64,000 nt of DNA, taken from assembly GCF_001194135.2 (NCBI RefSeq), contig NC_068995.1, positions 19,336,764-19,400,763 of the forward strand, in the 5' to 3' direction. The first letter of the stretch is position 1. The number at the start of each line of letters is the position of its first letter. Both the position numbers and the translations under genes were made by a program. The notes beneath the pieces were generated by a model. It saw only the letters and a list, made by a program, of their open reading frames with translations, had not been told where the DNA came from and made no database searches. The stretch comes from Octopus bimaculoides (lineage: Eukaryota). This document shows positions 7,890-61,970 of this stretch, piece by piece.

Positions 7890-7920
7890 CGTTTAACACG
7901 CACTTGGTGCGTGTTAAACG
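7890..7920. repeat. Perfect 14-bp inverted repeat, 3-nt loop
   Basis: CGTTTAACACGCAC-TTG-GTGCGTGTTAAACG. Confidence 0.95.
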
Positions 7921-17440: not shown

Positions 17441-17632
17441 TGGTTTCAGATTTTGGCACAAGGTCAGCATTTTCGAGATAGGAGGAAAACGATTACATCA
17501 ACCACAGTGCTCTACTTCTACTTATTTTATCGACCCCCATAAAAGGAAGGGCAGAGTCGACCTCGGCAGAATATGAACTCAGAACGTAAAGATGGATGAA
17601 AAACCCGGTAACCATTTTGCCAGCTCAGTGCC
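17441..17632 (-). mobile_element. SINE family A (tRNA head, gataaaataagtaccagttgagcactgggg body, ttgtgccaaaatttgaaacc tail)
   Basis: Reverse complement aligns to 48958-49168 and 56428-56628. Confidence 0.85.
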
Positions 17633-28944: not shown

Positions 28945-29075
28945 TGTAAGATCTATTATGAAACTAGAAAAATTATGAAACGGCTGTAAATGTATGGCAT
29001 AAACTTCTCTTGTGTATACTCTTTATCACACACACTGATACACACATACACACACACACAAACATACATACGTAC

Positions 29076-29151
<76 letters not shown>

Positions 29152-29356
29152 ATATGCATAAATATATATGTATATGTAAATATACATATATACATATATA
29201 CATGTATATATACGTATATACCTATACGTATGCATATATTTGTGTGTGTGTGTATGTGTGTATCAGTGTGTGTGATAAAGAGTATACACAAGAGAAGTTT
29301 ATGCCATACATTTACAGCCGTTTCATAATTTTTCTAGTTTCATAATAGAGATTACA
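28945..29356. repeat. Long inverted repeat: perfect 111-bp arms (28952-29062 / 29239-29349) around a 176-bp microsatellite spacer
   Basis: Arms compared base by base; outer 7 bp match at 5 of 7 (tgtaaga vs tgtaatc). Confidence 0.95.
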
Positions 29357-29595
29357 CGGGCAAAGCCATATATTGAGTAATTAACTTCATTAGTTTACAG
29401 TTGTTTCTGCTATACAGTGTAGTGGATTCATTACACTTGTATGTTCTGAAAATGAAGTGTACTTCATTTTGAAGGCTTCGTTGAAGCTATATGATATTAT
29501 CCTGGCACTGAGCTAAGAAGCTACTACATCTACAGAAGAATCAGCTGTAAGCCTAAAGAAGTTCATATAAACATATATGTACGCATATACATGAC

Positions 29596-36888: not shown

Positions 36889-37963
36889 GTATAGTTTTGT
36901 CAAAGAACTGTAGCCCTTTGAGGTATGCTAGCATCGTAGCTCCCCGGTTTCTATTGGTGTTCAGTGAATACTAAGTATATTACTTTTCCATTGATATATA
37001 TAGGTATTTAAAATACCTATATATATCAAAGGAAATGGAGCCACACAAAATGAAGTCCCTAGCTCAAGACATAAAACGAGTCTTTTCCGTATATCGAACC
37101 AGTGACTATACTATCGCGAAATCAAAAGCTGAATTAATCTAATAAATCTCTGCAAGTTGTTTATGTTTAGAGTTGTGGCTATGCTTGTGTATATGTGAAC
37201 ATGTGTCAATATATTTTAAACATGTAATAACGCCTTTCATAAAGAGCCATTGACATAGTTTTGAAAATTGTCGTACTTAAATTAGCTGACGAATTTAACA
37301 AGCATTTGAAAACTGCGTATATTGCCTGTTTTACATCGAATATTTAAAAGTACATTGCATGATGTGTCACGCTAAAAAAGGATATATCAATAAAATTTCA
37401 TATAAGTTGAATTGATTTACTCAACATTTTAGCTTGAAATACATTTACATAATAATATTACTAGGCATAGCTAATTACATATACACAAGATCTAAAATCT
37501 ATATGTCCGTTTATACGAAGCATGTAGATGAATCCATGCATGGCATGTGATGAAGCATTGATGCTTAAATTTATGTATACAAATATATATGTATTTATGT
37601 GAATATATATATAATTTTCTATGTAGGTGTGTATAAGGTGTGTATATATGTGTTCAAATACACAGGAAATAAACACTCCCAAACCTTCTCCAAACATGTA
37701 TATTAAAGTTTCTCGTACATGAATGAATGTTCGGATGAATAGATCGTTTATGTGTGAGTGTGAGTGTGTGTACAAAAATATGTAGACACATTTATATACG
37801 TGCCTGTGTGTGTATGTTTATATGTCTGTGTATGTGTATGTGCGTAAGCATTTGTGATATGAGATGTGTGAATGTGGTTTTAAAATATTATATATGTATA
37901 TATATACTCATATATATTTAAATGTATATATCTTTCATAGTTAACAACAACAGCAACAGCAAC

Positions 37964-39789: not shown

Positions 39790-40262
39790 CTACAAGAGGC
39801 AATCAACAGAAGGATTTTGGCGTAGTTAAGAGAAAAACGTGAATGAATCTAAAATAAGCAACCAAGAACCCGAGTCTACATCACGAAGATACACCTGAGC
39901 TATGCTGTAATTTCAAGATGCACTATAGTTAATTTCATTTAAAGCTGGTCTTAATGGGGATGGAACCAATTCGTACTGATTAAGAAAGGGACTATGGGCA
40001 AGTATCAGGTATTCCTATACAATATGTGTTTGTGTGTGTACAACAAGATACTATAACGATAAATTAATATGTCAAATACGTTATAATATACATGGCTAAA
40101 GCAATTAAAGACTCCAAAAGGTACAATACATAAATAAGGGGGCAAAAAACACCTACAACTGCTAGAAACCAGAGCTAAAAATACAACTCAAATAGCCACA
40201 CAAAGTCATTAACCTCATCAGATGTTCAATATATACACAACATTATTAGTAGCATAATTATT

Positions 40263-40478
40263 AAGGCGGTGAGCAAGAAGAATCGTTTGAACGCCCGGGT
40301 TGATGCTAAGCGGAATTTCGTCCGTCTTCATGTTCTGAGTTCAAATTCCAGCAACGTCCGCTTTGCTTCTGATCATTTCAGGGTCGATAAAATAAATACG
40401 ATTTCCATAATGGGGTTGACGTAACAGACTTATCCCTTCGCCCGAAATTGCTAGCCTTGCGCTAAAATTTGAAATCAT
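40263..40478 (+). mobile_element. SINE family A, full length
   Basis: aaggcggtgagc..gagttcaaattcc..gggtcgataaaat..gctagccttgcgctaaaatttgaaatc. Confidence 0.85.
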
Positions 40479-41697: not shown

Positions 41698-41747
<50 letters not shown>

Positions 41748-43921
41748 ATGTATGTATGTATGTGTGTATGTATACATACATTTATATATAAATATACTTA
41801 GAGTTTAATAAACGTTTGTAGTGAAGCGATAAATTAGCAATTGGTTTCCAGGAAGATAGGATTTCTTTGAAACTTTTTAGCAATTCATCAAATTATATGG
41901 AAAATTTTCTCTTTTTGTTTTCTTTTTTTCCATATACTAAGTACATGTCACACTGAGTATTAGTTAATTTTGTTTTGCAATATGGAATTTTGGAAATACC
42001 TGGACTCAAATATGGCTTTTTCTTTTTTTATTTCTATTACGTGTAAATTATTTTATAGCTGATGCATATTTGTGTGGGTTAGTCACTCGTTTATTGTGTA
42101 CCGTCTGAGAACCAACTCTGAGCAATTCGATTTGATCTTATTTTCGTCGCTGTATCTAGTAATATATCATTCCGTGTGTCTTTTGTTGTTTCAATACGAT
42201 AGTCTACTTGATCTGCTGTTGATTTTGGTGGGCAGATAATTCTAAGTTCAATAGTTCACTAAGTGTTTCCTTCATTGCAGGCCGGTTTAAAATTCACAGT
42301 AAATTTGAATGTGCAGCATAGATTCATTTTTCGTTTGATGATGTTTCTCTTTGCTAACGTTCCTAAACATCTTTGGAAAAGTCATAACCGTCGCTATATC
42401 TAGTTCCTGTTTTGCATGACATGCCAGCTCTTTATGTCTCACAGCACAAATAAATAAATGAATAAATTTCGAAGTAACAGTTATAAATCTGTTGTTCGAG
42501 CAGTCATAGGTTATCTATTGTGAACACATATTGTATATAGTTAATCAATCGAACTTTTATGTACGATGTACGCATACATATCCACCAAAGTTCCTTTCAT
42601 ATGTCTGCTTGTGTATCATTGTGCACATTCTAACATTTAGCCTTTAATTGTACGTCGTGCAATGGCGTTCCTTATCCATGTATTCACAGGTATCTCATCT
42701 GTCTCTGGATTACAGTAGTAGTTGTATTAGTTGTTCTTGTCGTTACTTGGTCATGCAGTTGAGGAGTATATGTATTATTGCAATACCTAGTGTTGTTGTT
42801 GCGTGTGCAGTTTTTCATGATATCATTCTCGTTTTTGCTGTTTTTGTTCCAGTTTTGGCTACTTTTATTGTTGCACTTGTGCCTTTTCTAGTTGCAGTTA
42901 TTTTCTTTTCCACCCCACCTATAACGTCTTACTACTTGACACAGTTTCCTTCTTATTTTCCTCGTGAAATCGATGAAGCAGCGGGTGTAGTAAGGGATGA
43001 TGGTTACTGTATTTGGGTGTATATGTGAAGTTTCTGCGAATGCTAGTTTTTAGATTAATCAGAACAGTATGTATTGTAACAATTTACTATATTTATCTCC
43101 ATTTGTTTTCATAATTCCCAGCTGAACACTAACACTGGAAATTTAAACATTGTAGTGTATTATAAAAAAAAAATTACTTCATATATTATAAAGTTATAAA
43201 ACAAAAGTAAAGATAACAAAATTGTTAATTCTAAAAGAAGTAGCAAAAACTGAAGATAATTCAAGATCTGTACGAATGCAATCAAAATACCTCTCTGTTC
43301 TAAATAAGCAGACAGAAAAACTGCGAAGAAGAATTTCTTATATAATAAGAGCGAAGAATTGTTCGACAAAACACAGTGAAAGCCATAAATTACACTGCAG
43401 TTTCAGAGATCGGAATGTAATGAACTCGGTCCAACACAGGCAAACCGAATGGTAGGTCATTAACCGAAAGAATAACAATATATCTAGTACCAATAACGGG
43501 GAATCAGAAAATATGTAGAACTATCACGAGTTATCCTTTGAGGTGAGTAACAAAAGGTAAGGTTACGAGGTGAAGATTGCGCTATTTGTGACGGACTGCT
43601 TAAATGAACATAACTGAGAGAGGGGGAAAAAAGAGAAAGAGTCACAGACAACGCAGACAAAGAGAGGGTGGAGTTGAAGAGTGAGCAAAGCCATTAAAAG
43701 AGTTACGGAAGTAGACTGTCAAAAACGGAAACGCAAGTTGTATAAGTGCGCAACAATACTCAGGAGGCTATTATATAAAATTGACCAGACTGAATCAACT
43801 GAAAATACACAATTGAACGTATTCTATTCGCTGTGATTTTATTCACAAAGATGTGAACATTTAGAAAGCTGGTTCACTTTCAGTGTGATGCTGGTTACGA
43901 AGGAAAACAAAATAGTAATAA

Positions 43922-44135
43922 AAGTAATTTCGTAGTGATATAGATAGTAGGAAGACAGTTCTATGTGACTTTACATACTCACACATACACATATATACTA
44001 ACACATGCACATATATATATATATACATGCATAGTTAGAATTCCTCAAGAAAAACATTTTCGCGCAAGGTACCTAGCAAATGATCTATATGCGTTAGCGC
44101 GCGTGTACATATGTTTGTGTGTAAACATGTGTATA
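43922..44135 (+). repeat. Copy 1 of a diverged direct duplication (partner 46353-46630)
   Basis: Shared colinear blocks agtaggaagacagttctatgt.actttacatactcacacata, atagttagaat and gcgcgtgta..tgtgtaaac.tgtgtata. Confidence 0.85.
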
Positions 44136-44187
44136 TCTATCTATCCATACGCATATGCACACACACACGCACACGCACACACACACA

Positions 44188-44223
<36 letters not shown>

Positions 44224-44407
44224 TATATATATATATATCTACATATATGACTATGAAGAGAAACAGAGAGAGATAATCACTCTGAACCATATCTCTTCGT
44301 ACATTTTCGTTTAAATTTTACAAGTTAAGTTGTGACATTCTTATCTCTCTCTCTCTCTCTCTCACTCTCTCTCTCTCTCTCTCTCCCTCTCTTAATATAT
44401 GTGTGTG

Positions 44408-44446
<39 letters not shown>

Positions 44447-44818
44447 ACGTGCGTCTGTGTGTGTGCGTCACGTCTGGTGACATATATGTAATGGCTGTAC
44501 TACTGATTATATCTAATAATGTAGAAATAGTAGTTCTCATCAGTAACATGTCTCCCGCTAATCGGATGTCTCTTCCTGCACAGCGTATCTCTTTTCTTTC
44601 TAGTATTTCTTTTGCATGAGATTATCCGAACTCAACATATCACATTTGCCACAAGGATTTTGTTTATTCCTCTCCCAAAGGGAAAATAATATCAATAAAT
44701 TAATAATTTGGTTCGTATTGTATGTAAAACAACTTAATTTGCCTTTTTTTTATATTCATTTCACTGTCAACTACGATCTATCTCTCTTAGCTCATTCTAG
44801 TTTAAATTGTATGCATAC

Positions 44819-44866
<48 letters not shown>

Positions 44867-45510
44867 TTATATATGTATCTGTAAGCATGTATACATGCTT
44901 ACACACACACACATGCGCACATGCATATATATGGGTATACTTATCTGTGTGCGCGCACATCTATGTATACATGTACGGATGCATGTACGTATGCATGTTT
45001 GTATGTATGTATTATCAATGGAAATTGCGTTACGTGATTAAAGATTTTGTCATCTTCGCTACCCAAATGGGAATCGAAATTCTTTACGAACTTACCATAT
45101 ATTACAGAGATGCTAAAACTTCAACTATAACAAAACAATAACAGTAATGGTATCGATATTACTGATATTGCCGTTCTTAGAAGCGATGTTAGTGGCGGTG
45201 GCGCTGGTTAGTGTATAGTGGCGATGACACACTTCATGATGATGATGATGATGATGATGATGTTGATGATGACGACGACGATGATGACACTGATGATGAT
45301 TCTTATTGTATTATTACCAAGAGACAAGAACAATTACATATATATATATATATATATATATACTTACTTGATAGTGTCTATAGAAAAAGCAGCAATGGCT
45401 TTAACGCTACGTGGTTTATCGGAAAGTAGGAAGACATAAACATCACCCAATCTCATTTGCTCACATTTTATATAGAAGCTGAGGACTTCTAACTAATACG
45501 GGAAATCAAT

Positions 45511-45592
45511 CTATCGATCTTGGACGAATGAAAGGCAAAGCCACCCTACATATAGTTTTGAGACTAGATCACTGGCGTATACAGACAGATAT
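45511..45592 (+). repeat. Left arm of an 82-bp perfect inverted repeat (includes a SINE A fragment)
   Basis: Exact reverse complement of 46464-46545. Confidence 0.95.
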
Positions 45593-46024
45593 CGTAATTG
45601 TATACAATGACAATAAAAACAGAATTGAATTGAATACATACTGCAAAGCATTCAGTTTGTTTCTTTACCATTGACTGTGTCTGATAATATTTGCCACTAT
45701 GGCATGACACTTCAAACGTGCTTTGTTTTGTTTTGTGTTTTTCATGATAGGAAATAGAAATTCAAGATCGCTAACGGGGTTTCCAATCCCATGATGTCTA
45801 ACTTCCCGAATATTCCAATGCTATTTCATTAAATATTTGGGTTTTTTTTTTTATGTTTTAATATTTTACTCTGGAAGAAGAACCTTATAGTTCGCTTGAA
45901 GCATTGCAGCATAGAAGTAAAATAATGAACGGAAAGGTAAGGGGGAAAGCTACTAACACTGCAGAAAAGAGCCGTTATATATTTCAGGCAAAAGAAGGAT
46001 ACTTTCAAAGAAATGTGCGTCTAT

Positions 46025-46049
46025 GTAGATCCTGCCAGGCAGGATCTAC
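46025..46049. repeat. Perfect 12-bp palindrome arms, 1-nt spacer
   Basis: GTAGATCCTGCC-A-GGCAGGATCTAC. Confidence 0.95.
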
Positions 46050-46165
46050 TGAGTCACATATTTCTTTGACTGTATCCTTTATGTTCTTCAATTTCCTTCT
46101 CTTCATTTTGAAAACCTTTTCTTATGTCCTTTTCTGTTTATTACTTTATTAAAGATTAATAATAA

Positions 46166-46261
46166 TGGTGAGCCGTCAGGATCGGTAAAGCATCGAGAAA
46201 ATTGCTTGGCGATATTTATTTCAGACACTTATGCTCTGATTTTAAAATTCAGGCGAAGTCT
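46166..46261 (+). mobile_element. SINE family A head, degenerate
   Basis: ggtgagccgtcaggatcggtaaagcatcg..aaattcaggcgaagtct. Confidence 0.6.
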
Positions 46262-46352
46262 AAGTTGTTTTCATTCTTTCGGCCTCAATGGTGTCGACAA
46301 CGCCACTTTCCTCAAAATTGATGGTCTTGTACATAAAGCGGGAATATAATAG

Positions 46353-46630
46353 AAGTACTTTCGTACGGATAGACAGTAGGAAGACAGTTCTATGTAACTT
46401 TACATACTCACACATATACACACACGCTAACTCATGCACACACATATATACATATACATATACATATCTGTCTGTATACGCCAGTGATCTAGTCTCAAAA
46501 CTATATGTAGGGTGGCTTTGCCTTTCATTCGTCCAAGATCGATAGTTAGAATGCTTCAAAAAAGCATGGTTCAAGTATTCTAAATGCGTTTGAGCGCGTG
46601 TATATGTGTTTTTGTGTAAACTTGTGTATA
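46353..46630 (+). repeat. Copy 2 of the diverged direct duplication, carrying the 82-bp inverted insert at 46464-46545
   Basis: Aligns to 43922-44135 on both sides of the insert. Confidence 0.85.
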
Positions 46631-47216
46631 GCACCAATCTCGTTCAAAGCATTCAAAATATGTAAAGAGAAACAGTTGTAAGAATTCACGTGACATACGC
46701 AGTAGAGCACTATGAAGCGGTCCATGGAAATACCGAAACTGTAATTGAATGTATCAGCGTTTATTTTTGAACTTAATTATTCACAAATTACTAAACGTAA
46801 TGCAAAAAAATTTCTACGGTCATTTCCATTATTTGTGTTGGGCATCGACTAAAAGAAACGGATTACTTGTACTAATATATATTTATATGGATATAATAGC
46901 ACACACTCAAATTATCGATATACAAAAATGCATATATATATATATATGCATACCAATATGTATAAGTGAGGGCGAGCGAAGATATGTATGCGTACGGAAT
47001 GTGTTCCTTTTTTTAGTGCGTGAATTGTCATGTGTGTATTTGTTTGTGTGTGTATGCTGGCATGGTGGATATGGTTGCGTACATGTGTCCGTATGGTTGA
47101 TTACATCGCTCACAAAGTGAATGCATTAGTCTACCTTTAAAACAATGGAATAAATTTATACAAAGACATATTTTTATATACCAAATTAAGCAATATGGGT
47201 GTGTGCTCATACATAA

Positions 47217-47258
<42 letters not shown>

Positions 47259-48957
47259 TACAGTTATTTCACCCTATATCCACATTAACAATGAGAACTA
47301 CTCTATAATTCCAAATCCATTGTGAATTCTATTCCCGTTATTGATTGTGTGTGAGTAGGCGCCATCACGCACAGGTGTGTGTAAAACACGAATTATGGGG
47401 GAACCCGATCATACAGATGTAACAATTTGTCTGCGATCATTCGACCATACGGACATATTGCACCTACATATATACATACATACACAAACAAATTTATCCA
47501 TAAGGAACAAAACCCGAAAACGTGGTAAAAATAAAAACAAATAGGGTTTATGAGGCTGATCCTCCTGAAAATTTGAAGTCTTTAGCCTTTCGAGCGTATG
47601 TTCGTCTTCAAAAAGGATACATGAGGAAAGAAATACAGGGACACGTGCTTGCGCGCGGCGTGCGCATGCATTTGTGTGTGTATTGCTGAAAGGCTGCATG
47701 GAAAGACAACAACGGACCATTTAGAAAACAGAAAAATCTCACAGAGGACGTTTACACACTCATCACCCACCAATCAGTTATAGACAAAACGTCATCAGAG
47801 TTTCGATGCCTTATCGATAGCACTTATGCTTTTTAGTAGCATATGGCTTACCGTTTTAGTTTCGCTTGTTCAATATAGAAAAGTCTTCAAGAGTACCTGA
47901 AACGTTTTTATTTCACTTTCAAAGAATTCAAACATACTCACACAACAGCTAGTGGCTCTACCAAACAACAACGAATTTCTTCTGTATTTCACCCGGGTAG
48001 GACAAACTACTTAATCTCCTTCAAAGTGCATCATTATATCTTAAAAATAGAAGGTCGTATTCCACAACGTATGTAATACACTAAGAAATAAATCCAATTG
48101 ACTATCTCGGTTCAGTTACCTTTAAACATATTTCTTGTACACTAGGCAGCACTTAAAGGTAAATAATTACAGATGATTCTAAAACTCTGAGTGAGTCTTA
48201 AAGACTTGTATTCATATAAGTTTTAGGAGATGAAACAATTGAAGTCATTTTTGAAGCTACATCGGTCTGTTGATAGGGCTATTACTTGAGAAGAGCTGTG
48301 CAATACTCTTTATACATTAAGTACCTTGCCAAACATAATGCCATTTACGCTGTATCTATGAGTAACAAGCATTTTCTAGTCAAATAAGTCGGCCATTTTG
48401 CTTTTATATTTTACAAATAAACTGGGTGAAAAAAATAAATATGTATATAGGTTGAAAAATATTCAAAAACTAGAGCAAAATATGCCTAGGGAGAGATATA
48501 TTTCTTTTATACTGAAATATTTGTTATGTTTTCTTGTTGAGAGAAAACAAAGCTAAAAGCTAAAATAGAATGTTACGTATTAAAAAAAATGTCCGTGATA
48601 AATACAAACGTTAAATTTAAAAATAGACGTATTTTAGTTTATTGAATAGTTTTTATTTTTAACTTATCAAACATTCTTTGTGAAGATGAAATAAAATTGT
48701 CTCAGTCTTTCTCTAGAGGCTTCGATTTTAAATAAATATTGGAGAAACGCCCGAGGTTTCGATGTTCATTATGACTATGCGTATGTAAGGTAAGTATACG
48801 GCTTCTATGTTTGTAGCAATTCCTATTTATTTATTTTTTGTTTGCTTCAAAATTTACGATTTTTTCAATTTTATTGTTGTTGTTGTTGTTGCTGTTTTTA
48901 TTGTTTTTGTTGCTGCTGTTGTTGTTGTTACTTTTGTTCTCGTTATAGTTGTTCTTA

Positions 48958-49407
48958 GGGCAGCGAGGTGGCTGAATCCTTAAGCACGCCGGGCAAAATG
49001 CTTAGCGTATTTCGTCCAGTTTACATTCTGAGTTCAAGTCCCATCGCCTCCGACTTTGCCTATCATCCTTTCAGGGTTCATAAAATAATAATCAGTTGAG
49101 CACCGAGGTCAATGTAAACGAGGTAGCCCTCCCCAGAAGTTGCTGGCCTTGTGCCAAAATTTGAAACCATTGTTGTTGTTTTTGTTATTAAAGCAACGGG
49201 CTGGGTGAATAGTTAGGTATTGAACAAATTTCTGAACAGCATTTCTTTCGCCGCCTTAGATTATTAGATGAAATGCCAATGAATTCGACTTTTCCTTTAA
49301 TCTTTATAGGGTCGATAAAATAAGTGCCAATCAAGCAGTGGGTTCTCTGTTATCGACTAGCGCCTCTCTGTAAAAGTGTTAGCCTCGAGACAAAATTAGA
49401 AAGGCAT
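48958..49407 (+). mobile_element. Two tandem SINE family A copies (48958-49168 and a more diverged 49191-49407)
   Basis: Each has head, gggtcgataaaataag-type body and aaaatt[ta]gaaa tail. Confidence 0.8.
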
Positions 49408-51004
49408 ACAGTTATTATCGGAGTATTAGTTGTTTTGGTACTATTGTTGCTGCCGTCTTTGCCGCTGCTGCTGCTGCTGCTATTGCTGTAAAATGTTACA
49501 GTCCCTAGAACATCTTTACAAGATATGTTCTCTAAAGGATATTCGGAGGATTTTCTTTCCCTTTACAAATTGTTCCGAAATATTTTTACCCTCCACGATG
49601 TTGCTTCTGATGAAATAAAATTCTTTTATTTTTTTCGACAATTTTTGCGTGCGTACCTTTTGTTTTGTTCTTAGTAGTTCAGTAAGAACACTTCTGTAGG
49701 AGCAAGGTAAAGTAAAATACATTAGGGAATATCTCCACAGTATCAGTTTTCTAAGCCCCAAAATACAACAGAGAGAGTTACAATATTGAAAACAAACAAT
49801 TAAAAACAGTGTTAGCTTTAAACTGACAGATACAAATGAAAAAGAATAGAGTAGACGCAAACTTAATTTCTAGAATTCTCGGAAGTTCGAACACCTCAAC
49901 TTACATGGGCGATCGTAGTAGAATTGGGTAGATATCGCTTTCTTTCATTTTTACCATGTGGCGACTTTAACGTGCGGTGGATGCAGTTTCATTGTATTAA
50001 TTTCTGAACAACGATCAGTTTATTATAGTGATTTAGAACACAATTTTAGGAAGAATGTTATAGTTATATTAGGAAGACATTCGAAATCGAGAAATTTAAT
50101 ATGATGGAAATGAAACGGGGAAAATTCATAAAATGAACTCGAATAAAATTTACCCGTTGCCGAGAATAGAAAATAATTTCAAGTAGAAAAATCGCATAAG
50201 AATTACGGAGTGCTGGAGAGAGACTAAAAGTATAAACATAACAAAAGTTTTCTGTAAAGAATGTTTTCACACAATGAAATTTTTTTCATAATCGATATTG
50301 AATGTCATGAAAATCATTCAATCAATACAATTTTGAACTTCTTATATTGGAAAGTTGCAGACTTAAAAAGAGGTTTAATTTACGTCGGTGAGACAGTATA
50401 ACTAGAGAAAACATTTTCTCCAAGTTTGTTGATACTCAATGTAAGAAACGGAGAAATGCGGAAAATAAACTAAGCGAACTTTGAAAGACAGAAACTTCAT
50501 CCTTTGTTATTGAAAAGAACAAAGAAAATAGGGAATGGCAAGAAGAGTTCATCCTGGAGAGTTCATCCTGGAAAAGATAATTGAAGAAAAAGATGGAGGG
50601 AATAATTTTATGACCCCAGGTTGTAATTGTAGATTGGATGAAGCAGTACTGTTCGCCCAATGTTAGAATTTGGGAATATTCAAAGGTGGTTGCCTTTCAC
50701 GTTGTATCTGAGTGTCCATATTTTACATAGAAAGTACGCAAAAAACGTGGACATGACAATACTCTTGAAATAATTCTCTAGGATTGTTTCAAGTTATTGG
50801 GTTTTGCATACACAGAAAATAGTTATGGCCATTTTGTGAGCAAAAAAAAGTAAGTACACGAATGGAAGAACTCTAATTTAAAATCTGAGAAGACTATTAG
50901 ACATAACAAAGAGTATAATGCCCGAAAAATGCCACGAAGCATTTTCTCCAGGATTTTTTTTAAATGCCAGTTCACCGCAATATATAATAACAATAATTCA
51001 TTCT

Positions 51005-51495
51005 GTTATTGGCACAAAACCTGAAATCTTGTGGAAGAGATACTCGGTTACATCGACCCAGTACCTATCAATCGGTACTTAATTTATCGACCTCGAAATG
51101 ATGAAAAACAAAGTACACCTCAGTGATATTTGAACTCAGAACATAAAGGTAGAAGAAATGCCGCTAAACATATTGTGCGCTTCAGTCCAGTGTAGAGCTC
51201 ACTGCCTTAATAATCCTTTCAACATTAGCAAAAAGCCTGAAAGTCTGCAGAGCAGAGGTAATTGGGTACACAGACTCCAGTGCTCAACGAGTAACGAAAC
51301 ATAATTCTTTAAATTTCGGCAATAGTCCAGCAACTTCAGCAGAATGGGAAAATCAATTAGATCGAGCCCTGTACTGTACGATTACTTATTTTATCAACGC
51401 TTAAAGAATGAAATGTAATGTTCTGGGTAAAATTTCAACTAGGGACGATTCAAAGCCGCACGAAATACTGCAAAAGATTTTGTTCCATTTGCTAC
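51005..51495 (-). mobile_element. Cluster of degenerate SINE family A copies
   Basis: ttggcacaaaacctgaaat..tacttaatttatcgacc..atttgaactcagaac (51005-51210), followed by further tail and body fragments. Confidence 0.7.
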
Positions 51496-51544
51496 GAGCA
51501 AAATACCGCTAAGTATTTCTTCTGGCGCGCGTTGCCTTTACAAT

Positions 51545-51571
51545 GATTATGATGATTATGATGACGCTGAC

Positions 51572-51615
<44 letters not shown>

Positions 51616-51629
51616 TGATGATGATGATA

Positions 51630-51673
<44 letters not shown>

Positions 51674-51675
51674 AT
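51545..51675. repeat. (GAC)n/(GAT)n compound microsatellite
   Basis: Direct reading. Confidence 0.95.
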
Positions 51676-51679
51676 ATTA

Positions 51680-52210
51680 AGATCTTGGAAAAATTGAGCA
51701 ATGTTTAATAGGAAACTGGAGAAATGGGAAAAAGACCGACCGATAAAAATTAGAGAAGAAATATAAAATACGAAAGAACGGGCTTGATGCAGTAACAGCG
51801 TTAAAACAGAGGATCATGGCAAAAAGCCAGAAGATCAGAAGATTTATAAACAGAAATAAGTAGTTCAATGAGAACAGATTGTTCAAAAATAACCCGCAGC
51901 AATTCTTCCCAAAGTTATAAAGAGACAATGGGGAAAATGCTGCTCCTGATGCAAATCAAATCAAGGAGTTCTGGAGCAGATTATGGGGAAAATATGAGGT
52001 GCATAAAAGGGATGCAATATGGATAAGAAATATCATGACAGAATTACAAGGAGAAAAGAAACAAAGGAATATTTTCATAAGCACGGGTGATGTGAAAGAA
52101 AAGTGGATAAAGTACCTAACTGGAACAACCCCGGACCAAATGGGATTCATGGATTCTGGCTGAAGAGGTACCACGTGGTGCATGAAAGACTAGCAGACCA
52201 ATTGAGTGAG
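51680..52210 (+). mobile_element. R4/Dong-like non-LTR retrotransposon fragment (pre-RT region and RT domain 0)
   Basis: LKQRIMAKSQKIRRF..NENRLFKNNPQQFF..P..IKEFWSRLWG..VPNWNNPGPNGIHGFWLKRY, matching the NWKAPGPDxIxxFWLK motif; stops and a frameshift present. Confidence 0.85.
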
Positions 52211-52214
52211 GGGA

Positions 52215-52340
52215 GGCGAACAACAACAGGAACATGAGCAACAACAACAACAAGGAGGAGGAGGAGGAGGAGAACAACAGGAACAAGAGCAACAACAACA
52301 GCATCAACAACAACAACAACAATAATAATAATAATGATGA

Positions 52341-52399
<59 letters not shown>

Positions 52400-52400
52400 T
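52215..52400. repeat. (AAC/GAG/AAT)n compound microsatellite
   Basis: Direct reading. Confidence 0.95.
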
Positions 52401-52737
52401 TACAATTATGTATTTCCAACATTTTCTTAATATTATGGTTCATATTGTTATTGTTGTTATTTCTATTATGTTTCACGTTATGATGTCATTCAAAATGTTC
52501 CTGTTGCTATTATATTTTAGTTGTGATTCGTACTAACGTAACTTGTTTCATGTAATATATAGAAAAATATGCTATTCCTGTAAGCTATTTATTTATAGCA
52601 TCGCCAAATACAATTGGCATTTCCAACGATTAACATTTCCGACAAAAGAACAAAGAACAGAAAATAAAGAGAAACACTGATTTCATGTTGGCCTTCATTC
52701 AGGAAAAAAATTTAAAATACATTTTTGCGTGAATGTT

Positions 52738-52905
52738 TCATCATCACCATCATCGTCATCATCATCATCAGCAGCAGCAGCAGCATCATCTCCATCATCA
52801 TCACCTTCTTCTTCTTCTCCTTCTTCTTCTTCTTCTTCTTCTTCTTCTTCTTCTTCTTCTTCTTCTTCTTCTTTTTCTTCTTCTTCTTCCTTTTCCCCTC
52901 CTCCC
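52738..52905. repeat. (CAT)(CAG)(CTT)n compound microsatellite abutting a gap
   Basis: Direct reading. Confidence 0.95.
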
Positions 52906-53317
52906 NNNNNNNNNNNNNNNNNNNNNNNNNNNNNNNNNNNNNNNNNNNNNNNNNNNNNNNNNNNNNNNNNNNNNNNNNNNNNNNNNNNNNNNNNNNNNNN
53001 NNNNNNNNNNNNNNNNNNNNNNNNNNNNNNNNNNNNNNNNNNNNNNNNNNNNNNNNNNNNNNNNNNNNNNNNNNNNNNNNNNNNNNNNNNNNNNNNNNNN
53101 NNNNNNNNNNNNNNNNNNNNNNNNNNNNNNNNNNNNNNNNNNNNNNNNNNNNNNNNNNNNNNNNNNNNNNNNNNNNNNNNNNNNNNNNNNNNNNNNNNNN
53201 NNNNNNNNNNNNNNNNNNNNNNNNNNNNNNNNNNNNNNNNNNNNNNNNNNNNNNNNNNNNNNNNNNNNNNNNNNNNNNNNNNNNNNNNNNNNNNNNNNNN
53301 NNNNNNNNNNNNNNNNN

Positions 53318-53607
53318 GTGAATTATTCAAATACCAAAGAATTCCTCTCAACTCAAAACTATGATGACCTCATTACTTCTGCTCGTGATCAGAGATGCAC
53401 AAATCGTCAGCCATAAAGAGACATACTCAAGTGGTTAACTGACACGCTCAACTGACAAACAAATCTGTGGTATTGAGCAGAATATTTTTGTAAGACAAAA
53501 CAATGTACATGATAACACTTCCAATCATTTAAGATCAGAAGCCATGAGACCCAATGCCTGGTTCTGCATTAGGGCATAGCCTGTCCATCGTACTGTATCA
53601 TTATTAC

Positions 53608-53672
<65 letters not shown>

Positions 53673-54076
53673 GAGCAGTGCATGCCATCAAAGTGACACT
53701 GGGGTAAAATATACGAAGCCCACTATACCCATCATGACTACCCGTCTGATAAGGGTACACCAGCCACATGCATCACAACCATATGTGCGCGACATGGTGA
53801 TCTCATATGAAAATAAACAGCGCATGACCTCCCAGGCGGGGCCCACATAGAATTTTCTTCAGGTCGAGTAGCCCATCCAGCTCAAAAGGTCCTTGAATAA
53901 GGTGTGTTTAAGGATGTTGAGCAAAACAACCATGTTTCCAAAGGGGAATTATTTAAACCCCAAAGAATTCCTCCCAACACATGGCTATGATGGTCCCCTA
54001 CTACTTCTGTTGATAAGAGATGCACATATCGTCAGCCACCAAGACAAAAGAATGTACAGGATAACACTTCCAATCA
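53318..54076 (-). mobile_element. Two head-to-tail copies of a non-coding interspersed repeat (53318-53575 and 53672-54076) separated by (TAT)n
   Basis: Copies share gaattatt..ccaaagaattcctc..gagatgcaca.atcgtcagcca and aagacaaaa.aatgtaca.gataacacttccaatca; the right copy lacks about 70 bp present in the left. Orientation inferred from the (AAT)n-abutting end. Confidence 0.75.
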
Positions 54077-54524: not shown

Positions 54525-54571
<47 letters not shown>

Positions 54572-54576
54572 TACTG

Positions 54577-54988
54577 AGGTGGTGAACAGTCAGAATCGTT
54601 AGCACGTCAGACAAAATGCTTAGTGGCATTACGTTCGTCTTTACGTTCCTAGCTCATATGCCGCCTAAGACGACTTTGAGGTTCATCCTTTCGGTGTCAA
54701 GTAATTAAGTACCAGCTGGGCACTGGTTTGATATAATGGACTAGTCTCCTCCCGCCAAAATTCGAGGTATTGTGCCGACAGCAAAAACAATAGCTATGTA
54801 TGTAAAGGCCAAGAAAGATCGTTAGCGTGCCACACAGATGTTTAGCGGCAGCTTCAGCTTCTCGGTTCAAATGCCAGAGAGGACAATTTTACCTTCCTTG
54901 ATAAAGAAGTATTTGAGCACTCAGTTCCATGAAATCGAATTATCACTGCCCTTAAAATTGCTGGCTTTGTACCAAAATTTGAAGCAAT
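54577..54988 (+). mobile_element. Two tandem SINE family A copies (54577-54788 and 54810-54988)
   Basis: cagaatcgttagcacgtc.. head, aagtaccagctgggcactgg body; second copy ends ttgtaccaaaatttgaagc. Confidence 0.8.
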
Positions 54989-56247: not shown

Positions 56248-56425
56248 CATCACCTGACAATCGGTGTTGGTTTGTTTACGTCCTTGTAACTTAGCAGTTC
56301 GGTATAAGACCGATAGAATAAATACTAGACTTTAAAAAAAGTACCGGGCGTGATCTGTTCGAATTAACCCTTCAAGTCGGTATCCTACTGTGGCTGTTGT
56401 CAAATAATCACAAGTAAATGATAAA
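56248..56425 (+). mobile_element. SINE family B, 3' half
   Basis: gacaatcggtgttggtttgtttacgtcc..aacttagcagttcgg..gaccgatagaataa, the reverse complement of the left part of 23330-23719. Confidence 0.8.
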
Positions 56426-56427
56426 AA

Positions 56428-56799
56428 TAGCAGAATGGTTAGCACACTGGTCAAATCGCTTAGCGGCATTTCGTGCAGCTTTATGTTCTGAGTTCAAATT
56501 CCACCGAGATCGACACTGCCTTTCATCCTTTCAGTGTCGATAAAATAAGTACCAGTTGAGCTCTGGGGTCGATGTAATTGAATTATACCCTCCGACAACT
56601 TGCTAGCCTTGTGCCATAATTTGTAACCAAAATGTAGATTTCCTAAGTTGTTGAGCAGGCAGAATCATTAGCACGCCGCTCAATATGCTTTTCGTCGTTT
56701 GTGTACCAATAAAAGATTGTACTGGCTGAACAATGGAATCAATCTAATCGACTTAGATCCTTCCTCGAAATGACTAACCTTGTGCCAAAATTTGAAAGC
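56428..56799 (+). mobile_element. Two tandem SINE family A copies (56428-56628 well preserved; 56648-56799 internally deleted)
   Basis: gcagaatggttagcac..gagttcaaattccaccgag..gtcgataaaataagtaccagttgagc..ccttgtgcc. Confidence 0.85.
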
Positions 56800-56929: not shown

Positions 56930-57154
56930 TTATAACCTACATGGGACTAAACATAGAGGGAATAAACAAGGACAGACAAAGGGATTAAGTCGATTACATC
57001 GACCCTAGTTCGTAACTGGTGCTTAATTAATCGACCCAGAAATGATGAAAGGCAAAGTCGAGCTCGGCGGAATTTGAACCCTGAAAGTAACGGCAGACGA
57101 AACACGTTAAGCATTTCGCCCTTTTTGCAAACGATTCTGCCAGCTCGCCGCCTT
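56930..57154 (-). mobile_element. SINE family A head and body with an alternative 3' tail
   Basis: Minus strand: aaggcggcgagctggcagaatcgtt..gttcaaattccgccgag..gatgtaatcgactt then aatccctttgtctgtccttgtt instead of the ttgtgccaaaatttgaa tail. Confidence 0.85.
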
Positions 57155-57619
57155 CAGTTCAAATATTTTATTGATGGCTTAAAATATAATTTGTAGAACT
57201 CGTGGAAATCTAATATTATAAGTATTCTAATTTCTCTTTTAATTGTATTAATTCGTAGTCCTTCATGAATTTGTTTTATGTTAAGAATTTCGAATACTTT
57301 TCAATTTCGTTCTTAGTTTAAGATTGTTAGTAGCGTAACACTCGAACACATATGATGAGCAGCCGAATAATTATAGTTTAATTAATCTAAACGATTTTAA
57401 ACCAGTTCAGTTATTTATCAATAAGCATCGAATATATAGGTTAGTCAGGGAGAATTTTTTGAAGATTTACATCCCCACACATGGGGGGTGCTCCAGCGTG
57501 GCCGCAGACGCTTGGCCGAAATGAATAAAAGAATTAAAGAATATGAATGTAAGGAATTATTGAATGTCCAATTGCATATCTAGATATAAGAATATTTATG
57601 CATGTGTTTGTGTGTGTAC

Positions 57620-58813: not shown

Positions 58814-59438
58814 TAAGTCCGGGCTATATGCTGGGTGGTGGTATTAGCTCCAATCACTCAAGTTCCAAGAGTTTATTCTTGGTTTATTGAGCGATGTGAA
58901 CTCTTGCGTTGTCTAACTGCAACAGAGTTTGGTTTCTGTTAACCAATGTTGGGTATTTTTCCTTCACAATGGCATAAATCACGGCCAACTTTTCATAGTA
59001 AAAGTTGGCATCAATAGTTCGGCCGGCCTGAAAGAATTCGTAGTGAATTATTATCTGATATTTCCACCAAACGCAGGGTGTCACCATTCCTTCGGTGAGG
59101 GGTTCTGGAAAGTGGCTCGTGCTTAGGCACTGATTAAGCATGTCAGGAATAAGAAAGAATTGTCTCAATCTGATTATTAGTTGCTCCGATCCATGCCTCA
59201 CATCCTAGGTTCGCGAAGCTTCATCAATCAAGAAAAGGTGGAATTTGCAGTGAAGGAGTTCTCCTCTGAAATGACAAGAACTAGTATAACTGTAGGATCA
59301 AAATAACTAGCAGAAAGATGGCTTCAAACGTCGCAACACGGTGGCCGTTACTTTAAATGTTAGGCTGTTTTTGTTGAAATTTGACGAATAAATCAAATAA
59401 GTTTCCAAAATATTGTAAACTTTTGATTCAACAGAATA
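58814..59438. mobile_element. Mariner (DD34D-type) transposase relic with internal inversion
   Basis: Minus 59150-58814: CVWW..IHYEF..TIDANFY..LQLDNARVH..HPAYSPDL. Plus 59160-59363: LSQSDY*LLRSM..SFINQEKVE..LAERWLQT...GRYFKC*. TIR-like aacttttgattcaacagaata at about 59418-59438. Confidence 0.9.
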
Positions 59439-60480: not shown

Positions 60481-61127
60481 AGGCGTTGGTCGATTGGTAT
60501 AAAATGAAGTCCCTCCTTACTTGCCTCTGGTCAAGGAAGCCCGGATGTTTATGGCTTTACCCCTCTACTTCTGACTAAACAATGAAAAAAAAGAGAAAAT
60601 AAACAACGTCAAAAAATGTATCAATAACCATAATAATAATCTCTAGCTTGGGATGACTGTTGATTAGATCATTTGCAGGAATCCTGTTGTTATTAATTAT
60701 TTCTATCGATCCGGGATTGATTGGCGGTAAAGTTTGGGAAAGAGGGATTTAAACTGATTATATAAAAGGATGTAATTGAATTACTCAGTAATTTTTTCAT
60801 TGGTCTCCTAATTGTGAAATATATTCAGAAATGTTACGAATTTAAGAACCAGGTCAACAGTTTTTTTTTTTAAAGGGAGTTAATAAAATTGATAACACTA
60901 CATCATCTCTACTTCATTTTTATCGATCCCAGAGGAAAGAAAATCAAAGTTGACTGCAACGTAATTGAACTAAACGTGCAAAGAGTCATAACCATAACGT
61001 AACTTTCAAATTTTTGCACAGAGCCAGCAATTACATAGAATCCAGTGCTTAACTGATATTTATTTTATTGACCCTAATAAACCGATACATAGATTTCAGT
61101 GCTCAATTAGTACTTATATCAACCCTG

Positions 61128-61312
61128 AAGGCGGCGTGGTGGCAGAAACGTTAGCACGTCGGGTAAAATGATTGGCGATATTTCGTCCGTCTTCAGGTTC
61201 TGAGTTCAAATTCCGCCGAGGTCTACTTTGCCTTTCATTCTTTTGGGGTTGATGAAATAAGTACTAGTTGAGCACTGGGGACAATGCAGAATTTCAGAAA
61301 TTGTGCCTATTA
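61128..61312 (+). mobile_element. SINE family A with its tail interrupted by a MITE
   Basis: aaggcggcgtggtggcagaaacgttagcacg..gagttcaaattccgccgagg..aagtactagttgagcactgggg..ttgtgcctat, then the MITE, then gaaagaatt. Confidence 0.85.
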
Positions 61313-61314
61313 TA

Positions 61315-61524
61315 CAGGGTGTCCACAAAGTCTGGGTACTTGGAGTAAATAAAATCATAACATAAACAATTGAATATAAGAAATAATAATTTCTTAAAGT
61401 ATGTGTTATTCCCCATGTGGGTACATGGAGTAAATAAAATCATAACCTAAACAATTAATTATAAAAAAATAATTTCTTAAAGTATGTGTTTATCCCCATG
61501 TACCCAGACTTTGTGGACACCCTG
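61315..61524. mobile_element. Tc1/mariner-type MITE, 210 bp, 25-bp TIRs, TA target duplication, internal 85-bp tandem duplication
   Basis: TA|CAGGGTGTCCACAAAGTCTGGGTAC...GTACCCAGACTTTGTGGACACCCTG|TA; internal units start at 61334 and 61419. Confidence 0.92.
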
Positions 61525-61970
61525 TAGAAAGAATTGTAGCAACTCTGAAACACTGAAAGTCCAGTATTGGAAGTCAGAACTACCTCTAAGCAGTACTTTT
61601 ACGAAACGCTAAAGATTCTGTCAAATCGCCGCCTTTATAAATGTTTATAACTTCGACATAAAAACATATTTCGTGAAGATGAGTTACTGTACTGAATTTC
61701 ACACCGTTGAATAACAGTCAATACGCTACGTTCATTGAATCTGCGTAGAATATTTTATCTTACTTACCAACAATTAATTTCAATATCAAGTATATATATT
61801 AAAGGGGGACCTATAAAATCAGACACATAAAGAATGCATAAGAGTACGAATGCATAGATATCTGTTTGAATATATGTGTCTGAGTGTTTGCGCGAGCACA
61901 TAATATAATATATATAAATGTGTGTGCGTACCCACGCGTATATGCATATACGTGTGAGTGTGTGTGTGGG

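What the first reader, a model, noticed from the sequence alone, without database searches (positions are those of the whole stretch)
45511..46545. 82-bp templated inverted insertion copied from about 900 bp upstream
Seen: 46464-46545 is the exact reverse complement of 45511-45592. It interrupts copy 2 of the older duplication between a (TACA)-type repeat and atagttagaat, where copy 1 has no insert. ATAG at the right junction belongs to both donor and flank (4-nt microhomology). SINE homology extends beyond the left arm, marking it as the donor. This geometry matches templated insertions from polymerase-theta end joining or microhomology-mediated template switching (established mechanisms; the assignment is inference). 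Perfect identity implies a recent event.
Basis: partly seen in the sequence, partly recalled or inferred. Interest (0 to 1): 0.7.

Follow-up and report, generated by a model that had tools for sequence, protein, structure and literature searches.

The report
Recent 78-bp inverted templated insertion
A short stretch of non-coding animal DNA was recently copied backwards from about 0.9 kb upstream and pasted next to a microsatellite; this is a clean but ordinary footprint of a known copying error, not a new genetic element.

Summary
46464-46545 is the exact reverse complement of 45511-45592 (82/82), and the 22-mer core of the 82-mer has only these two sites in the window. The right arm sits in the break of a roughly 225-bp older paralogous pair. 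Copy 1 is 43911-44135. Copy 2 is 46343-46463 plus 46542-46630. They are 85% identical. Deleting 78 nt (46464-46541) makes copy 2 collinear with copy 1. So only the right arm was inserted, which rules out a 1,035-bp transposon with terminal inverted repeats. The left arm is the donor.

Junctions carry microhomology: ATAG on the right (P=0.016) and ATA/ATAT on the left, in register with (ATATAC)n. I also found a pre-existing 9-nt inverted match (45487-45495 / 46543-46551, P about 0.006) at the acceptor junction.

An error-free 82-nt tract copied from 0.9 kb away, with no sequence lost, fits a replicative microhomology-mediated switch-and-return better than typical polymerase-theta insertions.

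The window is a gapped draft assembly, so an assembly artefact cannot be excluded without reads (about 0.13).

This is a known kind of mutation and of low interest. A second near-perfect inverted repeat (28945-29356) hints that the process may recur here.

The parts
45511..45592 (+). Donor (left arm), the template of the copied tract
   Evidence: It is the exact reverse complement of 46464-46545. Positions 1-37 resemble the local SINE consensus, 28/36. No paralogue shows this site empty.
46464..46545 (-). Inserted inverted copy (right arm). The net insertion is 78 nt (46464-46541). The last 4 nt (ATAG) are shared with the ancestral site.
   Evidence: Removing 46464-46541 restores collinearity with the empty paralogue, copy 1.
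46542..46545 (+). Right-junction microhomology ATAG. It matches the reverse complement of donor 45511-14 and copy 1 at 44031-34.
   Evidence: family D9. P(microhomology of 4 nt or more) = 0.016 for random donor ends in this contig.
46446..46467 (+). (ATATAC)x3.7 microsatellite. Its perfect register runs into the first 4 nt (ATAT) of the insert, giving a left-junction microhomology of 3-4 nt. It is the probable stall or break site.
   Evidence: TRF, 100% matches. The ancestral ATA of ATAG ends up on both sides of the insert.
45487..45495 (+). TTCTAACTA, one half of a pre-existing 9-nt inverted microhomology. It lies 15 nt outside the donor's outer end.
   Evidence: It is the reverse complement of 46543-46551. 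P(a common inverted 9-mer in random 30 x 34 nt window pairs) = 0.006.
46543..46551 (+). TAGTTAGAA, the other half of the 9-nt inverted microhomology, at the acceptor's right junction. It is ancestral, because copy 1 also has it at 44032-44040.
43911..44135 (+). Copy 1 of the older duplication, the 'empty-site' paralogue
46343..46630 (+). Copy 2 of the older duplication, interrupted by the insert
   Evidence: The unit HMM hits it in two pieces, 46345-46466 and 46537-46630.
45497..45676 (+). Possible very degenerate SINE remnant around the donor. This is weak evidence only.
   Evidence: nhmmer gives 45506-45542 against the SINE HMM at E = 0.043. The single-sequence hit to SINE copy 56557-56413 has E = 0.1. 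Flank shuffle tests give P about 0.13.
46153..46342 (-). SINE copy inside the spacer, abutting copy 2. It is not part of the event.
   Evidence: nhmmer hit at 46286-46167, E = 2e-9, envelope 46153-46300. The 5' part continues to about 46342 by eye.
45918..46148 (.). Older quasi-palindrome in the middle of the spacer. The core is 45995-46079 at 82%, with perfect 12-bp stems at 46025-36 and 46038-49. Its centre is 5-9 bp from the midpoint (46028) of the two arms.
   Evidence: The DNA fold has z = -4.9.

Best explanation
This is a genuine, evolutionarily recent, single 'switch-and-return' template-switch mutation.

Proposed steps:
1. A growing DNA 3' end stalled or broke at the (ATATAC)n / ATAG boundary inside copy 2 of an older duplication.
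2. It left its template and re-annealed by microhomology about 0.9 kb away, on the strand of the same sense.
3. It copied 78-82 nt (45592 to 45511, or the reverse direction).
4. It returned by microhomology to the very position it had left.

The product is a net 78-bp insertion in reverse-complement orientation, and therefore a new perfect 82-bp inverted repeat with an 871-bp spacer. No ancestral sequence was lost.

The landing sites carry more than minimal homology:
- Right: the minus-strand end 5'-TTCTAACTAT-3' can pair 4 nt terminally (CTAT, 45511-14). It can pair 6 further nt (TTCTAA, 45487-92) if 18 template nt loop out.
- Left: ATA(T), plus an imperfect 9/11 match after a 1-nt bulge.

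I favour a replicative origin, of the FoSTeS/MMBIR or long-range template-switch-mutation type, at a fork troubled by the microsatellite. I rank this above end joining of a two-ended break.

What is shown: the insertion, its polarity relative to the paralogue, the microhomologies and the youth of the event. What is inferred: the enzymology, the direction of synthesis and the replicative context.
For: - The exact 82/82 inverted identity is unique in the window.
- The empty paralogue shows a clean 78-nt insertion with collinear flanks at 85% identity.
- The ATAG microhomology has P = 0.016.
- The (ATATAC)n register continues into the insert.
- The 9-nt pre-existing inverted microhomology at the acceptor junction has P = 0.006.
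- Zero differences in 82 nt gives a 95% upper bound of 3.6% divergence, against 15-16% for the host duplication and 13-30% for all other repeats.
- Both arms and the spacer lie in one gap-free 11.2-kb contig, at least 3.8 kb from any N run.
- The geometry is exactly the reverse-complement 2-to-3 fragment of the four-point model (PMC5453318).
- The single long error-free tract and the distance are unlike polymerase-theta insertions (PMC7165422; PMC5068794).
- Local inverted repeats and palindromes of all ages occur in the window, which suggests a natural continuing process.
Against: - No reads, second assembly, other individual or sister species could be examined (all found nothing). The junctions are therefore unverified, and the ancestral state is inferred from an 85%-identical paralogue only.
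- The tract (about 80 nt) and the jump (about 0.9 kb) are much larger than typical short-range template-switch mutations, whose expected fragment is about 10 nt (PMC7954356).
- The jump is also larger than the 40-80 bp spacing favoured for leading-to-lagging switches in yeast (PMC10766183).
- The 9-nt match and the split-pairing model are post-hoc.
- The left-junction extended match is not significant (P = 0.09).
- Replicative and break-repair origins cannot be told apart from sequence.
Confidence: 0.72

Rival explanations
1. [quoted passage not shown] The resected plus-strand 3' tail snapped back in cis onto its own strand about 870 nt upstream and was extended for about 80 nt. It was then joined to the other end through ATAG.
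For: - The insert is inverted and lies on the same side, within resection range, which is what in-cis snap-back predicts (Pol theta templated extension in cis, PMC4912351, listed).
- Both junctions carry microhomology.
- The primer end and the donor's inner flank share an imperfect 12/15 match.
Against: - Primary synthesis tracts of TMEJ insertions are rarely longer than 10 bp, and the microhomology search is confined to about 15 bp from the ends (PMC7165422).
- In C. elegans the average insert is about 10 bp, 85% are primed within 10 bp, and errors are about 1 per 30 nt (PMC5068794). That gives P about 0.07 for an error-free 78-82 nt tract (my arithmetic).
- No deletion accompanies the insert, and the ancestral ATA is present on both sides. 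This is easier to explain with a nascent strand that returns to the same template position.
Confidence: 0.18
2. The right arm is an assembly artefact. It was placed wrongly in a short-read, gap-closed draft assembly at a hard-to-assemble microsatellite, for example from chimeric or mis-oriented reads.
For: - The window has 11 N gaps in 64 kb, so it is a draft scaffold.
- The left junction lies in a microsatellite.
- The insert is about one short read long.
- A second near-perfect local inverted repeat also lies beside microsatellites (28945-29356), and no perfect complex direct repeat exists. That pattern could be technical.
Against: - Two independent chimeric junctions would be needed, both inside otherwise collinear sequence. 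Nothing is missing relative to the paralogue.
- The right junction shares only 4 nt, far too little for an overlap or k-mer join without supporting reads.
- The locus is at least 3.8 kb from any gap.
- The other inverted repeat has differences between its arms (98%) and an asymmetric spacer, so it is not a simple walk-back artefact.
- Inverted repeats of all ages are present.
Confidence: 0.13
3. The inverted insertion is old and only looks young. The two arms have been kept identical by gene conversion between inverted repeats.
For: Inverted repeats can be homogenised by intrachromosomal conversion (established knowledge). The identity tract coincides with the whole homology block, as conversion would also produce.
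Against: - The arms are only 82 bp with an 871-bp spacer, which makes a poor conversion substrate.
- There is not a single difference, whereas neighbouring repeats are 13-30% diverged.
- It still requires the same templated insertion as the founding event, so it changes the date and not the nature of the event.
Confidence: 0.06
4. 45511-46545 is a 1,035-bp DNA transposon or MITE with 82-bp terminal inverted repeats. Alternatively, the 82-mer is the end of a multicopy element.
For: Formally these are perfect terminal inverted repeats. A real MITE with a TA duplication exists elsewhere in the window (61313-61526).
Against: - Sequence immediately inside the right arm (46343-46463) and immediately outside it (46542-46630) is contiguous in the paralogue, copy 1. 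Only the arm is inserted, not the 1,035-bp unit.
- There is no target-site duplication (flanks ...ATCAAT and TTAGAA...).
- There are no further copies in the window.
- The abundant SINE family matches only about 31-37 nt of the arm at about 80%.
Confidence: 0.01

Closest known systems
Short-range template-switch mutations (Ripley quasi-palindrome model; four-point model of Loytynoja & Goldman 2017, PMC5453318; Walker et al. 2021, PMC7954356)
   Same: One switch-and-return event replaces or inserts sequence with the reverse complement of a nearby fragment, creating a perfect inverted repeat at a stroke. Here the points are 1 and 4 at 46463/46542, 2 at 45592 and 3 at 45511 (or the mirror order).
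   Different: The typical copied fragment is about 10 nt and the template lies within tens to a few hundred nt. Here the fragment is 78-82 nt and the jump is 0.87-0.95 kb. The authors explicitly leave long-range switches to FoSTeS/MMBIR.
FoSTeS / MMBIR (fork stalling and template switching; microhomology-mediated break-induced replication)
   Same: Both involve microhomology-primed switching of a nascent 3' end to nearby single-stranded template, in either orientation. Both produce templated insertions of tens to hundreds of bp at the joins (established knowledge; named).
   Different: Those models were framed for copy-number variants and complex rearrangements with serial switches. Here there is a single excursion that returns to the same base, so no copy-number change occurs beyond the 78 bp.
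Polymerase-theta end joining: locally templated insertions (TINS), SD-MMEJ 'snap-back' (PMC7165422, PMC5068794, PMC4912351, PMC2943611)
   Same: Both show junctional microhomology, an insert templated from the flank, and an inverted orientation as in snap-back synthesis.
   Different: Here the tract is about 8 times longer, the template is about 60 times farther away, no errors are seen and no deletion is seen.
ODIRA-type leading-to-lagging strand switch at short interrupted inverted repeats (PMC10766183)
   Same: A pre-existing short inverted repeat (9 nt here; 2-14 bp there) lies at the switch point, and the context is a stalled fork.
   Different: ODIRA repeats are spaced about 40-80 bp apart and the outcome is a hairpin-capped amplicon or inverted triplication. 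Here the spacing is about 1 kb and the strand returns.

Membership tests
Template-switch mutation (four-point model) | The inserted or replaced fragment is the reverse complement of nearby sequence on the same chromosome | tested here: met
   82/82 exact reverse complement, with 871 nt between the arms.
Template-switch mutation (four-point model) | A single switch-and-return explains the whole difference from the ancestral sequence | tested here: met
   Using copy 1 as a proxy ancestor, removing one 78-nt block restores collinearity. The proxy is a paralogue and not an outgroup.
Template-switch mutation (four-point model) | The ancestral (empty) state is documented in a sister lineage or population | not testable with these tools
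   No orthologous DNA could be retrieved.
Template-switch mutation (four-point model) | Short range and short fragment (about 10 nt, local) | tested here: not met
   The fragment is 78-82 nt and the jump is about 0.9 kb, against an expected 2-to-3 length of about 10 (PMC7954356).
FoSTeS/MMBIR templated insertion | Microhomology at both joins | tested here: met
   ATAG on the right (P = 0.016). ATA/ATAT on the left, in microsatellite register. A 9-nt inverted match lies beside the right join (P = 0.006).
FoSTeS/MMBIR templated insertion | The template is nearby, in either orientation, with a tract of tens to hundreds of nt | tested here: met
   82 nt, inverted, 0.87-0.95 kb away.
FoSTeS/MMBIR templated insertion | Replicative origin (stalled or collapsed fork) | not testable with these tools
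   This is only suggested by the microsatellite at the join and by the absence of any loss of sequence.
Pol theta TMEJ templated insertion (TINS) | The template lies within the immediate break flank, with microhomology search within about 15 bp | tested here: not met
   The donor is 871-950 nt from the join, against PMC7165422 and PMC5068794.
Pol theta TMEJ templated insertion (TINS) | Short, error-prone synthesis tracts (rarely longer than 10 bp; about 1 error per 30 nt) | tested here: not met
   A single 78-82 nt tract with 0 errors.
Pol theta TMEJ templated insertion (TINS) | Dependence on POLQ | not testable with these tools
   This requires genetics.
TIR DNA transposon / MITE | Target-site duplication flanking the terminal inverted repeats | tested here: not met
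   The flanks are ...AAATCAAT and TTAGAATG....
TIR DNA transposon / MITE | The whole element is absent from the empty site | tested here: not met
   The paralogue lacks only the right arm. Sequence on both sides of that arm is contiguous in copy 1.
TIR DNA transposon / MITE | Multiple dispersed copies | tested here: not met
   No other copy was found in 64 kb. Genome-wide copy number was not testable.
Independent SINE retroposition as source of the right arm | Similarity to the family consensus comparable to other copies, with a tail and a target-site duplication | tested here: not met
   The right arm is 100% identical to the left arm. It matches the SINE HMM only over 31 nt (E = 0.13). It has no tail or target-site duplication.

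The most novel reading that the evidence does not exclude
The event may not be a one-off. This genome, or this region, may have an unusually active microsatellite-associated process that makes long (about 80-120 nt) perfect local inverted duplications.

In 59 kb of called sequence, the only two long exact complex repeats are both inverted and both abut microsatellites: 82 nt here and 111 nt at 28952-29349. Older palindromes of graded identity are also scattered through the window. The new 82-bp repeat is nearly concentric with an older quasi-palindrome.

If transcribed, such repeats would be ready-made long double-stranded RNA hairpins. They could serve as substrates for RNA editing or small-RNA pathways.
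Probability: 0.12. Interest if true: 0.55.

Novelty: new member of a known kind. Interest (0 to 1): 0.22.

Why it matters
As a single event it matters little. It is a tidy natural example of a long-range inverted templated insertion whose ancestral state can be read from a neighbouring paralogue. Both junction microhomologies and an extra 9-nt inverted match are visible.

It is useful as a worked case in three respects:
- Such events create perfect hairpin-forming repeats in one step.
- Length, distance and fidelity can be used to weigh replicative switching against polymerase-theta repair.
- It would matter more if the hint of recurrence at microsatellites (a second perfect inverted repeat 17 kb away) held genome-wide. 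That would point to a lineage-specific source of structural mutation and of double-stranded-RNA-forming loci.

It is also a flag for assembly quality control. Perfect read-length inverted repeats beside microsatellites in draft assemblies deserve checking against reads.

Tried and rejected
1. Transposon with terminal inverted repeats spanning 45511-46545. Rejected, because the paralogue shows that only the right arm is inserted and there is no target-site duplication.

2. Multicopy element end. There are no other copies in the window. The SINE HMM covers only about 31-37 nt of the arm.

3. SINE-based polarity. I built two SINE HMMs from 6 and 13 window copies. Flank-versus-consensus shuffle tests gave P = 0.13 and 0.14 for the left arm, and 0.65 and 0.98 for the right arm. 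The distal half of the arm itself is not SINE-like (P = 0.49). Single-sequence nhmmer gave E = 0.1. This is suggestive only.

4. Extended homology at the inner junction (BLAST's 94-column gapped alignment). It is not significant (P = 0.09).

5. Retrieval of an independent copy of the locus.
   - Two spurious ORFs spanning the right arm are not on record.
   - Exact-pattern scans of the metagenome collection (two) and the prokaryote genome collection (one) found nothing. This was expected for an animal sequence.
   - No convincing coding ORF lies within 10 kb.
   - The mariner fragment at 58887-59204 gave no homologue by word index.

6. Organism identification. There is no tRNA or Rfam hit. No paper contains the SINE motif. 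The SINE motif I used as bait came from my own memory of cephalopod (octopus-like) repeats. It does hit the window's SINE family, but the species remains unverified.

7. My first complexity filter for exact repeats was length-biased and hid the 111-nt repeat. I corrected this.

8. Apparent similarity between 29359-29380 and the arm (GGCAAAGCCA). It is a chance 10-mer.

9. Heterozygous-inversion or haplotype-merge explanations, and mate-pair junction chimeras. I considered these on paper. Neither reproduces an inverted block with two junctions in collinear flanks.

Full report
**What the window is.** The 64-kb window is AT-rich eukaryotic DNA full of microsatellites. It has 11 runs of N, so it is a scaffolded draft assembly. 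It has no tRNA or Rfam hits and no convincing coding ORF near the locus. It carries more than 20 copies or fragments of one SINE family. The finding lies in a gap-free contig, 41698-52905, at least 3.8 kb from any gap. I could not identify the organism. The SINE motif I used as bait came from my own memory of octopus-like repeats, and that identification is unverified.

**The observation.**
- 45511-45592 and 46464-46545 are exact reverse complements, 82/82 (pair I1).
- Identity stops on both sides. Three of 5 bases match outward, and nothing matches inward without gaps.
- A 22-mer from the core occurs exactly twice, with 0 expected.
- In a whole-window self-BLAST this pair is the only repeat of at least 40 bp and at least 95% identity. 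SINE copies and other repeats are 70-87% identical.

**The 'older duplication' is real.**
- 43911-44028 matches 46343-46459 (84%, E 5e-29). 44031-44135 matches 46542-46630.
- The right arm fills the break exactly.
- When 46464-46541 (78 nt) is removed, copy 2 aligns collinearly through the junction with copy 1...ACATGC|ATAGTTAGAAT against ...ATATAC|ATAGTTAGAAT. Identity is 85% excluding gaps.
- Hence only the right arm is an insertion, and the sequence just inside and just outside it was once contiguous. That disposes of a 1,035-bp transposon with terminal inverted repeats, which also lacks a target-site duplication.

**Polarity and age.**
- The paralogue makes the right arm the derived copy.
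  - Arm positions 1-37 resemble the SINE consensus (28/36), but the rest of the arm does not (P = 0.49).
  - The left arm's two flanks score P = 0.13 and 0.14 against shuffles. The right arm's flanks score 0.65 and 0.98.
  - nhmmer gives E = 0.043 for 45506-45542 and E = 0.1 for 45497-45676 against one SINE copy.
- Zero differences in 82 nt gives a 95% upper bound of 3.6% divergence. If the arms were as old as the host duplication, the probability of no difference would be 6e-7.
- Gene conversion between the arms could in principle reset this clock.

**Junctions.**
- Right: ATAG (46542-45) is shared by the donor (CTAT, 45511-14) and by the ancestral site (copy 1, 44031-34). Microhomology of 4 nt or more occurs for 1.6% of random donor ends in this contig.
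- Left: Tandem Repeats Finder shows a perfect (ATATAC)x3.7 from 46446 to 46467, so its register runs through the first four bases (ATAT) of the insert. The ancestral ATA of ATAG is therefore present on both sides of the 78-nt net insertion, and nothing ancestral is missing.
- New observation: TTCTAACTA at 45487-45495, 15 nt beyond the donor's outer end, is the reverse complement of TAGTTAGAA at 46543-46551. The latter is the acceptor's right junction and is also present in copy 1, so it is ancestral. A shared inverted 9-mer occurs in 0.6% of random window pairs.
  - A minus-strand 3' end 5'-TTCTAACTAT-3' could thus pair 6 nt (45487-92) plus 4 nt (45511-14) with an 18-nt template loop.
  - It could then be extended through 45515-45592 and return with its terminal TAT onto the same ATA.
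- The mirror scenario is equally allowed by geometry. In it, a plus-strand end from the microsatellite primes at 45589-92 and has an imperfect 9/11 further match after a 1-nt bulge. That extended match is not significant (P = 0.09).

- Polymerase-theta insertions fit poorly.
  - Primary tracts are rarely longer than 10 bp and microhomology search is within 15 bp of the ends (PMC7165422).
  - Inserts average about 10 bp, 85% are primed within 10 bp, and about 1 error per 30 nt is reported (PMC5068794).
  - Here there is one error-free 78-82 nt tract, 0.87-0.95 kb away, with no detectable deletion.
- Short-range template-switch mutations share the logic, but their fragments are about 10 nt (PMC7954356).
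- Yeast leading-to-lagging switches use inverted repeats of 2-14 bp spaced 40-80 bp apart (PMC10766183).
- The best fit is therefore a FoSTeS/MMBIR-like, microhomology-mediated replicative switch-and-return, probably triggered at the microsatellite. A snap-back end-joining event is the main biological rival. Sequence alone cannot separate them.

**Artefact.**
- I could not obtain reads or another assembly.
- An artefact would need two chimeric junctions placed so that nothing else is lost, one of them with only 4 nt of overlap. I consider this unlikely but not excluded (about 0.13).
- The question gains weight because the window has a second near-perfect inverted repeat beside microsatellites: 28945-29066 / 29235-29356, 122 nt at 98%, exact over 111 nt. 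An exhaustive scan found no complex exact direct repeat of 24 nt or more.
- Against a purely technical origin, that second repeat has differences between its arms and an asymmetric spacer. The window also holds local palindromes of graded identity, 94%, 90%, 82% and 76%, as a continuing natural process would leave.

**Unexplained detail.**
- The spacer contains an older quasi-palindrome. It spans 45918-46148 with a core at 45995-46079 (82%), and has perfect 12-bp stems at 46025-36 and 46038-49. Its DNA fold has z = -4.9.
- Its centre (46033-46037) lies 5-9 bp from the midpoint of the two arms (46028). By my estimate this is a 2-3% coincidence.
- I know of no physical reason why a central hairpin should favour symmetric positions about 320 nt out, so I leave it as noted.

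**Verdict.** This is a new instance of a known class of mutation, of low general interest (0.22). There is a modest chance (about 0.12) that it samples a recurrent microsatellite-linked inverted-duplication process worth a genome-wide look.

Noticed in passing
window 28945-29356: A second near-perfect local inverted repeat. The arms are 28945-29066 and 29235-29356 (122 nt, 98%, exact over 111 nt) and are mostly unique sequence. The spacer of about 170 nt is made of (CA)n, (TA)~32, (TG)n and TA-rich repeats. There is no target-site duplication. The one difference near the outer end is GA against TC, which is itself a 2-nt reverse complement. Together with the 82-nt pair, these are the only long exact complex repeats in the window, and both are inverted.
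   Followed up: partly
window 61313-61526: A 214-bp MITE with 25-bp terminal inverted repeats (CAGGGTGTCCACAAAGTCTGGGTAC), flanked by TA on both sides, so it is Tc1/mariner-like. It has an internal tandem duplication of about 85 nt (61333-61418 / 61418-61501, 90%). It sits against a SINE copy (61120-61348).
   Followed up: partly
window 58887-59204 (-): A degenerate mariner-type transposase fragment (Pfam PF01359 Transposase_1, E = 8.5e-7). The word-indexed protein search returned no homologue.
   Followed up: partly
window-wide, e.g. 17441-17641, 40256-40477, 48952-49402, 50997-51494, 54570-54987, 56410-56629, 56942-57159, 61120-61348: One SINE family of about 220-260 bp (core ...GATGAAAGGCAAAGTCGACCTCGGCGGAATTTGAACTCAGAAC...) has more than 20 copies or fragments in 64 kb. 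Copies are 70-80% identical to one another, so this was an old burst.
   Followed up: partly
window 45918-46148: A quasi-palindrome in the spacer with perfect 12-bp stems at 46025-36 and 46038-49 (DNA fold z = -4.9). It is nearly concentric with the 82-nt arms (centres 46033-46037 and 46028). I estimate this as a 2-3% coincidence, and it is unexplained.
   Followed up: partly
window 44146-44468: An inverted microsatellite block just after copy 1: (CA)33 at 44158-44223, (TC)24 at 44344-44392 and (TG)33 at 44400-44465. The CA and TG arms are up to 88% complementary over 58-72 nt.
   Followed up: no
window 44880-44903, 36985-37035, 7890-7920: Further short palindromes: a perfect 24-nt palindrome TGTAAGCATGTATACATGCTTACA, a 51-nt palindrome at 94% (136 nt from an N gap), and a 31-nt palindrome at 90%.
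   Followed up: no
window 53320-53527 / 53946-54076: A local direct duplication (100 nt at 79% and 36 nt at 94%, spacing about 0.5-0.6 kb) immediately after the N gap at 52906-53317.
   Followed up: no
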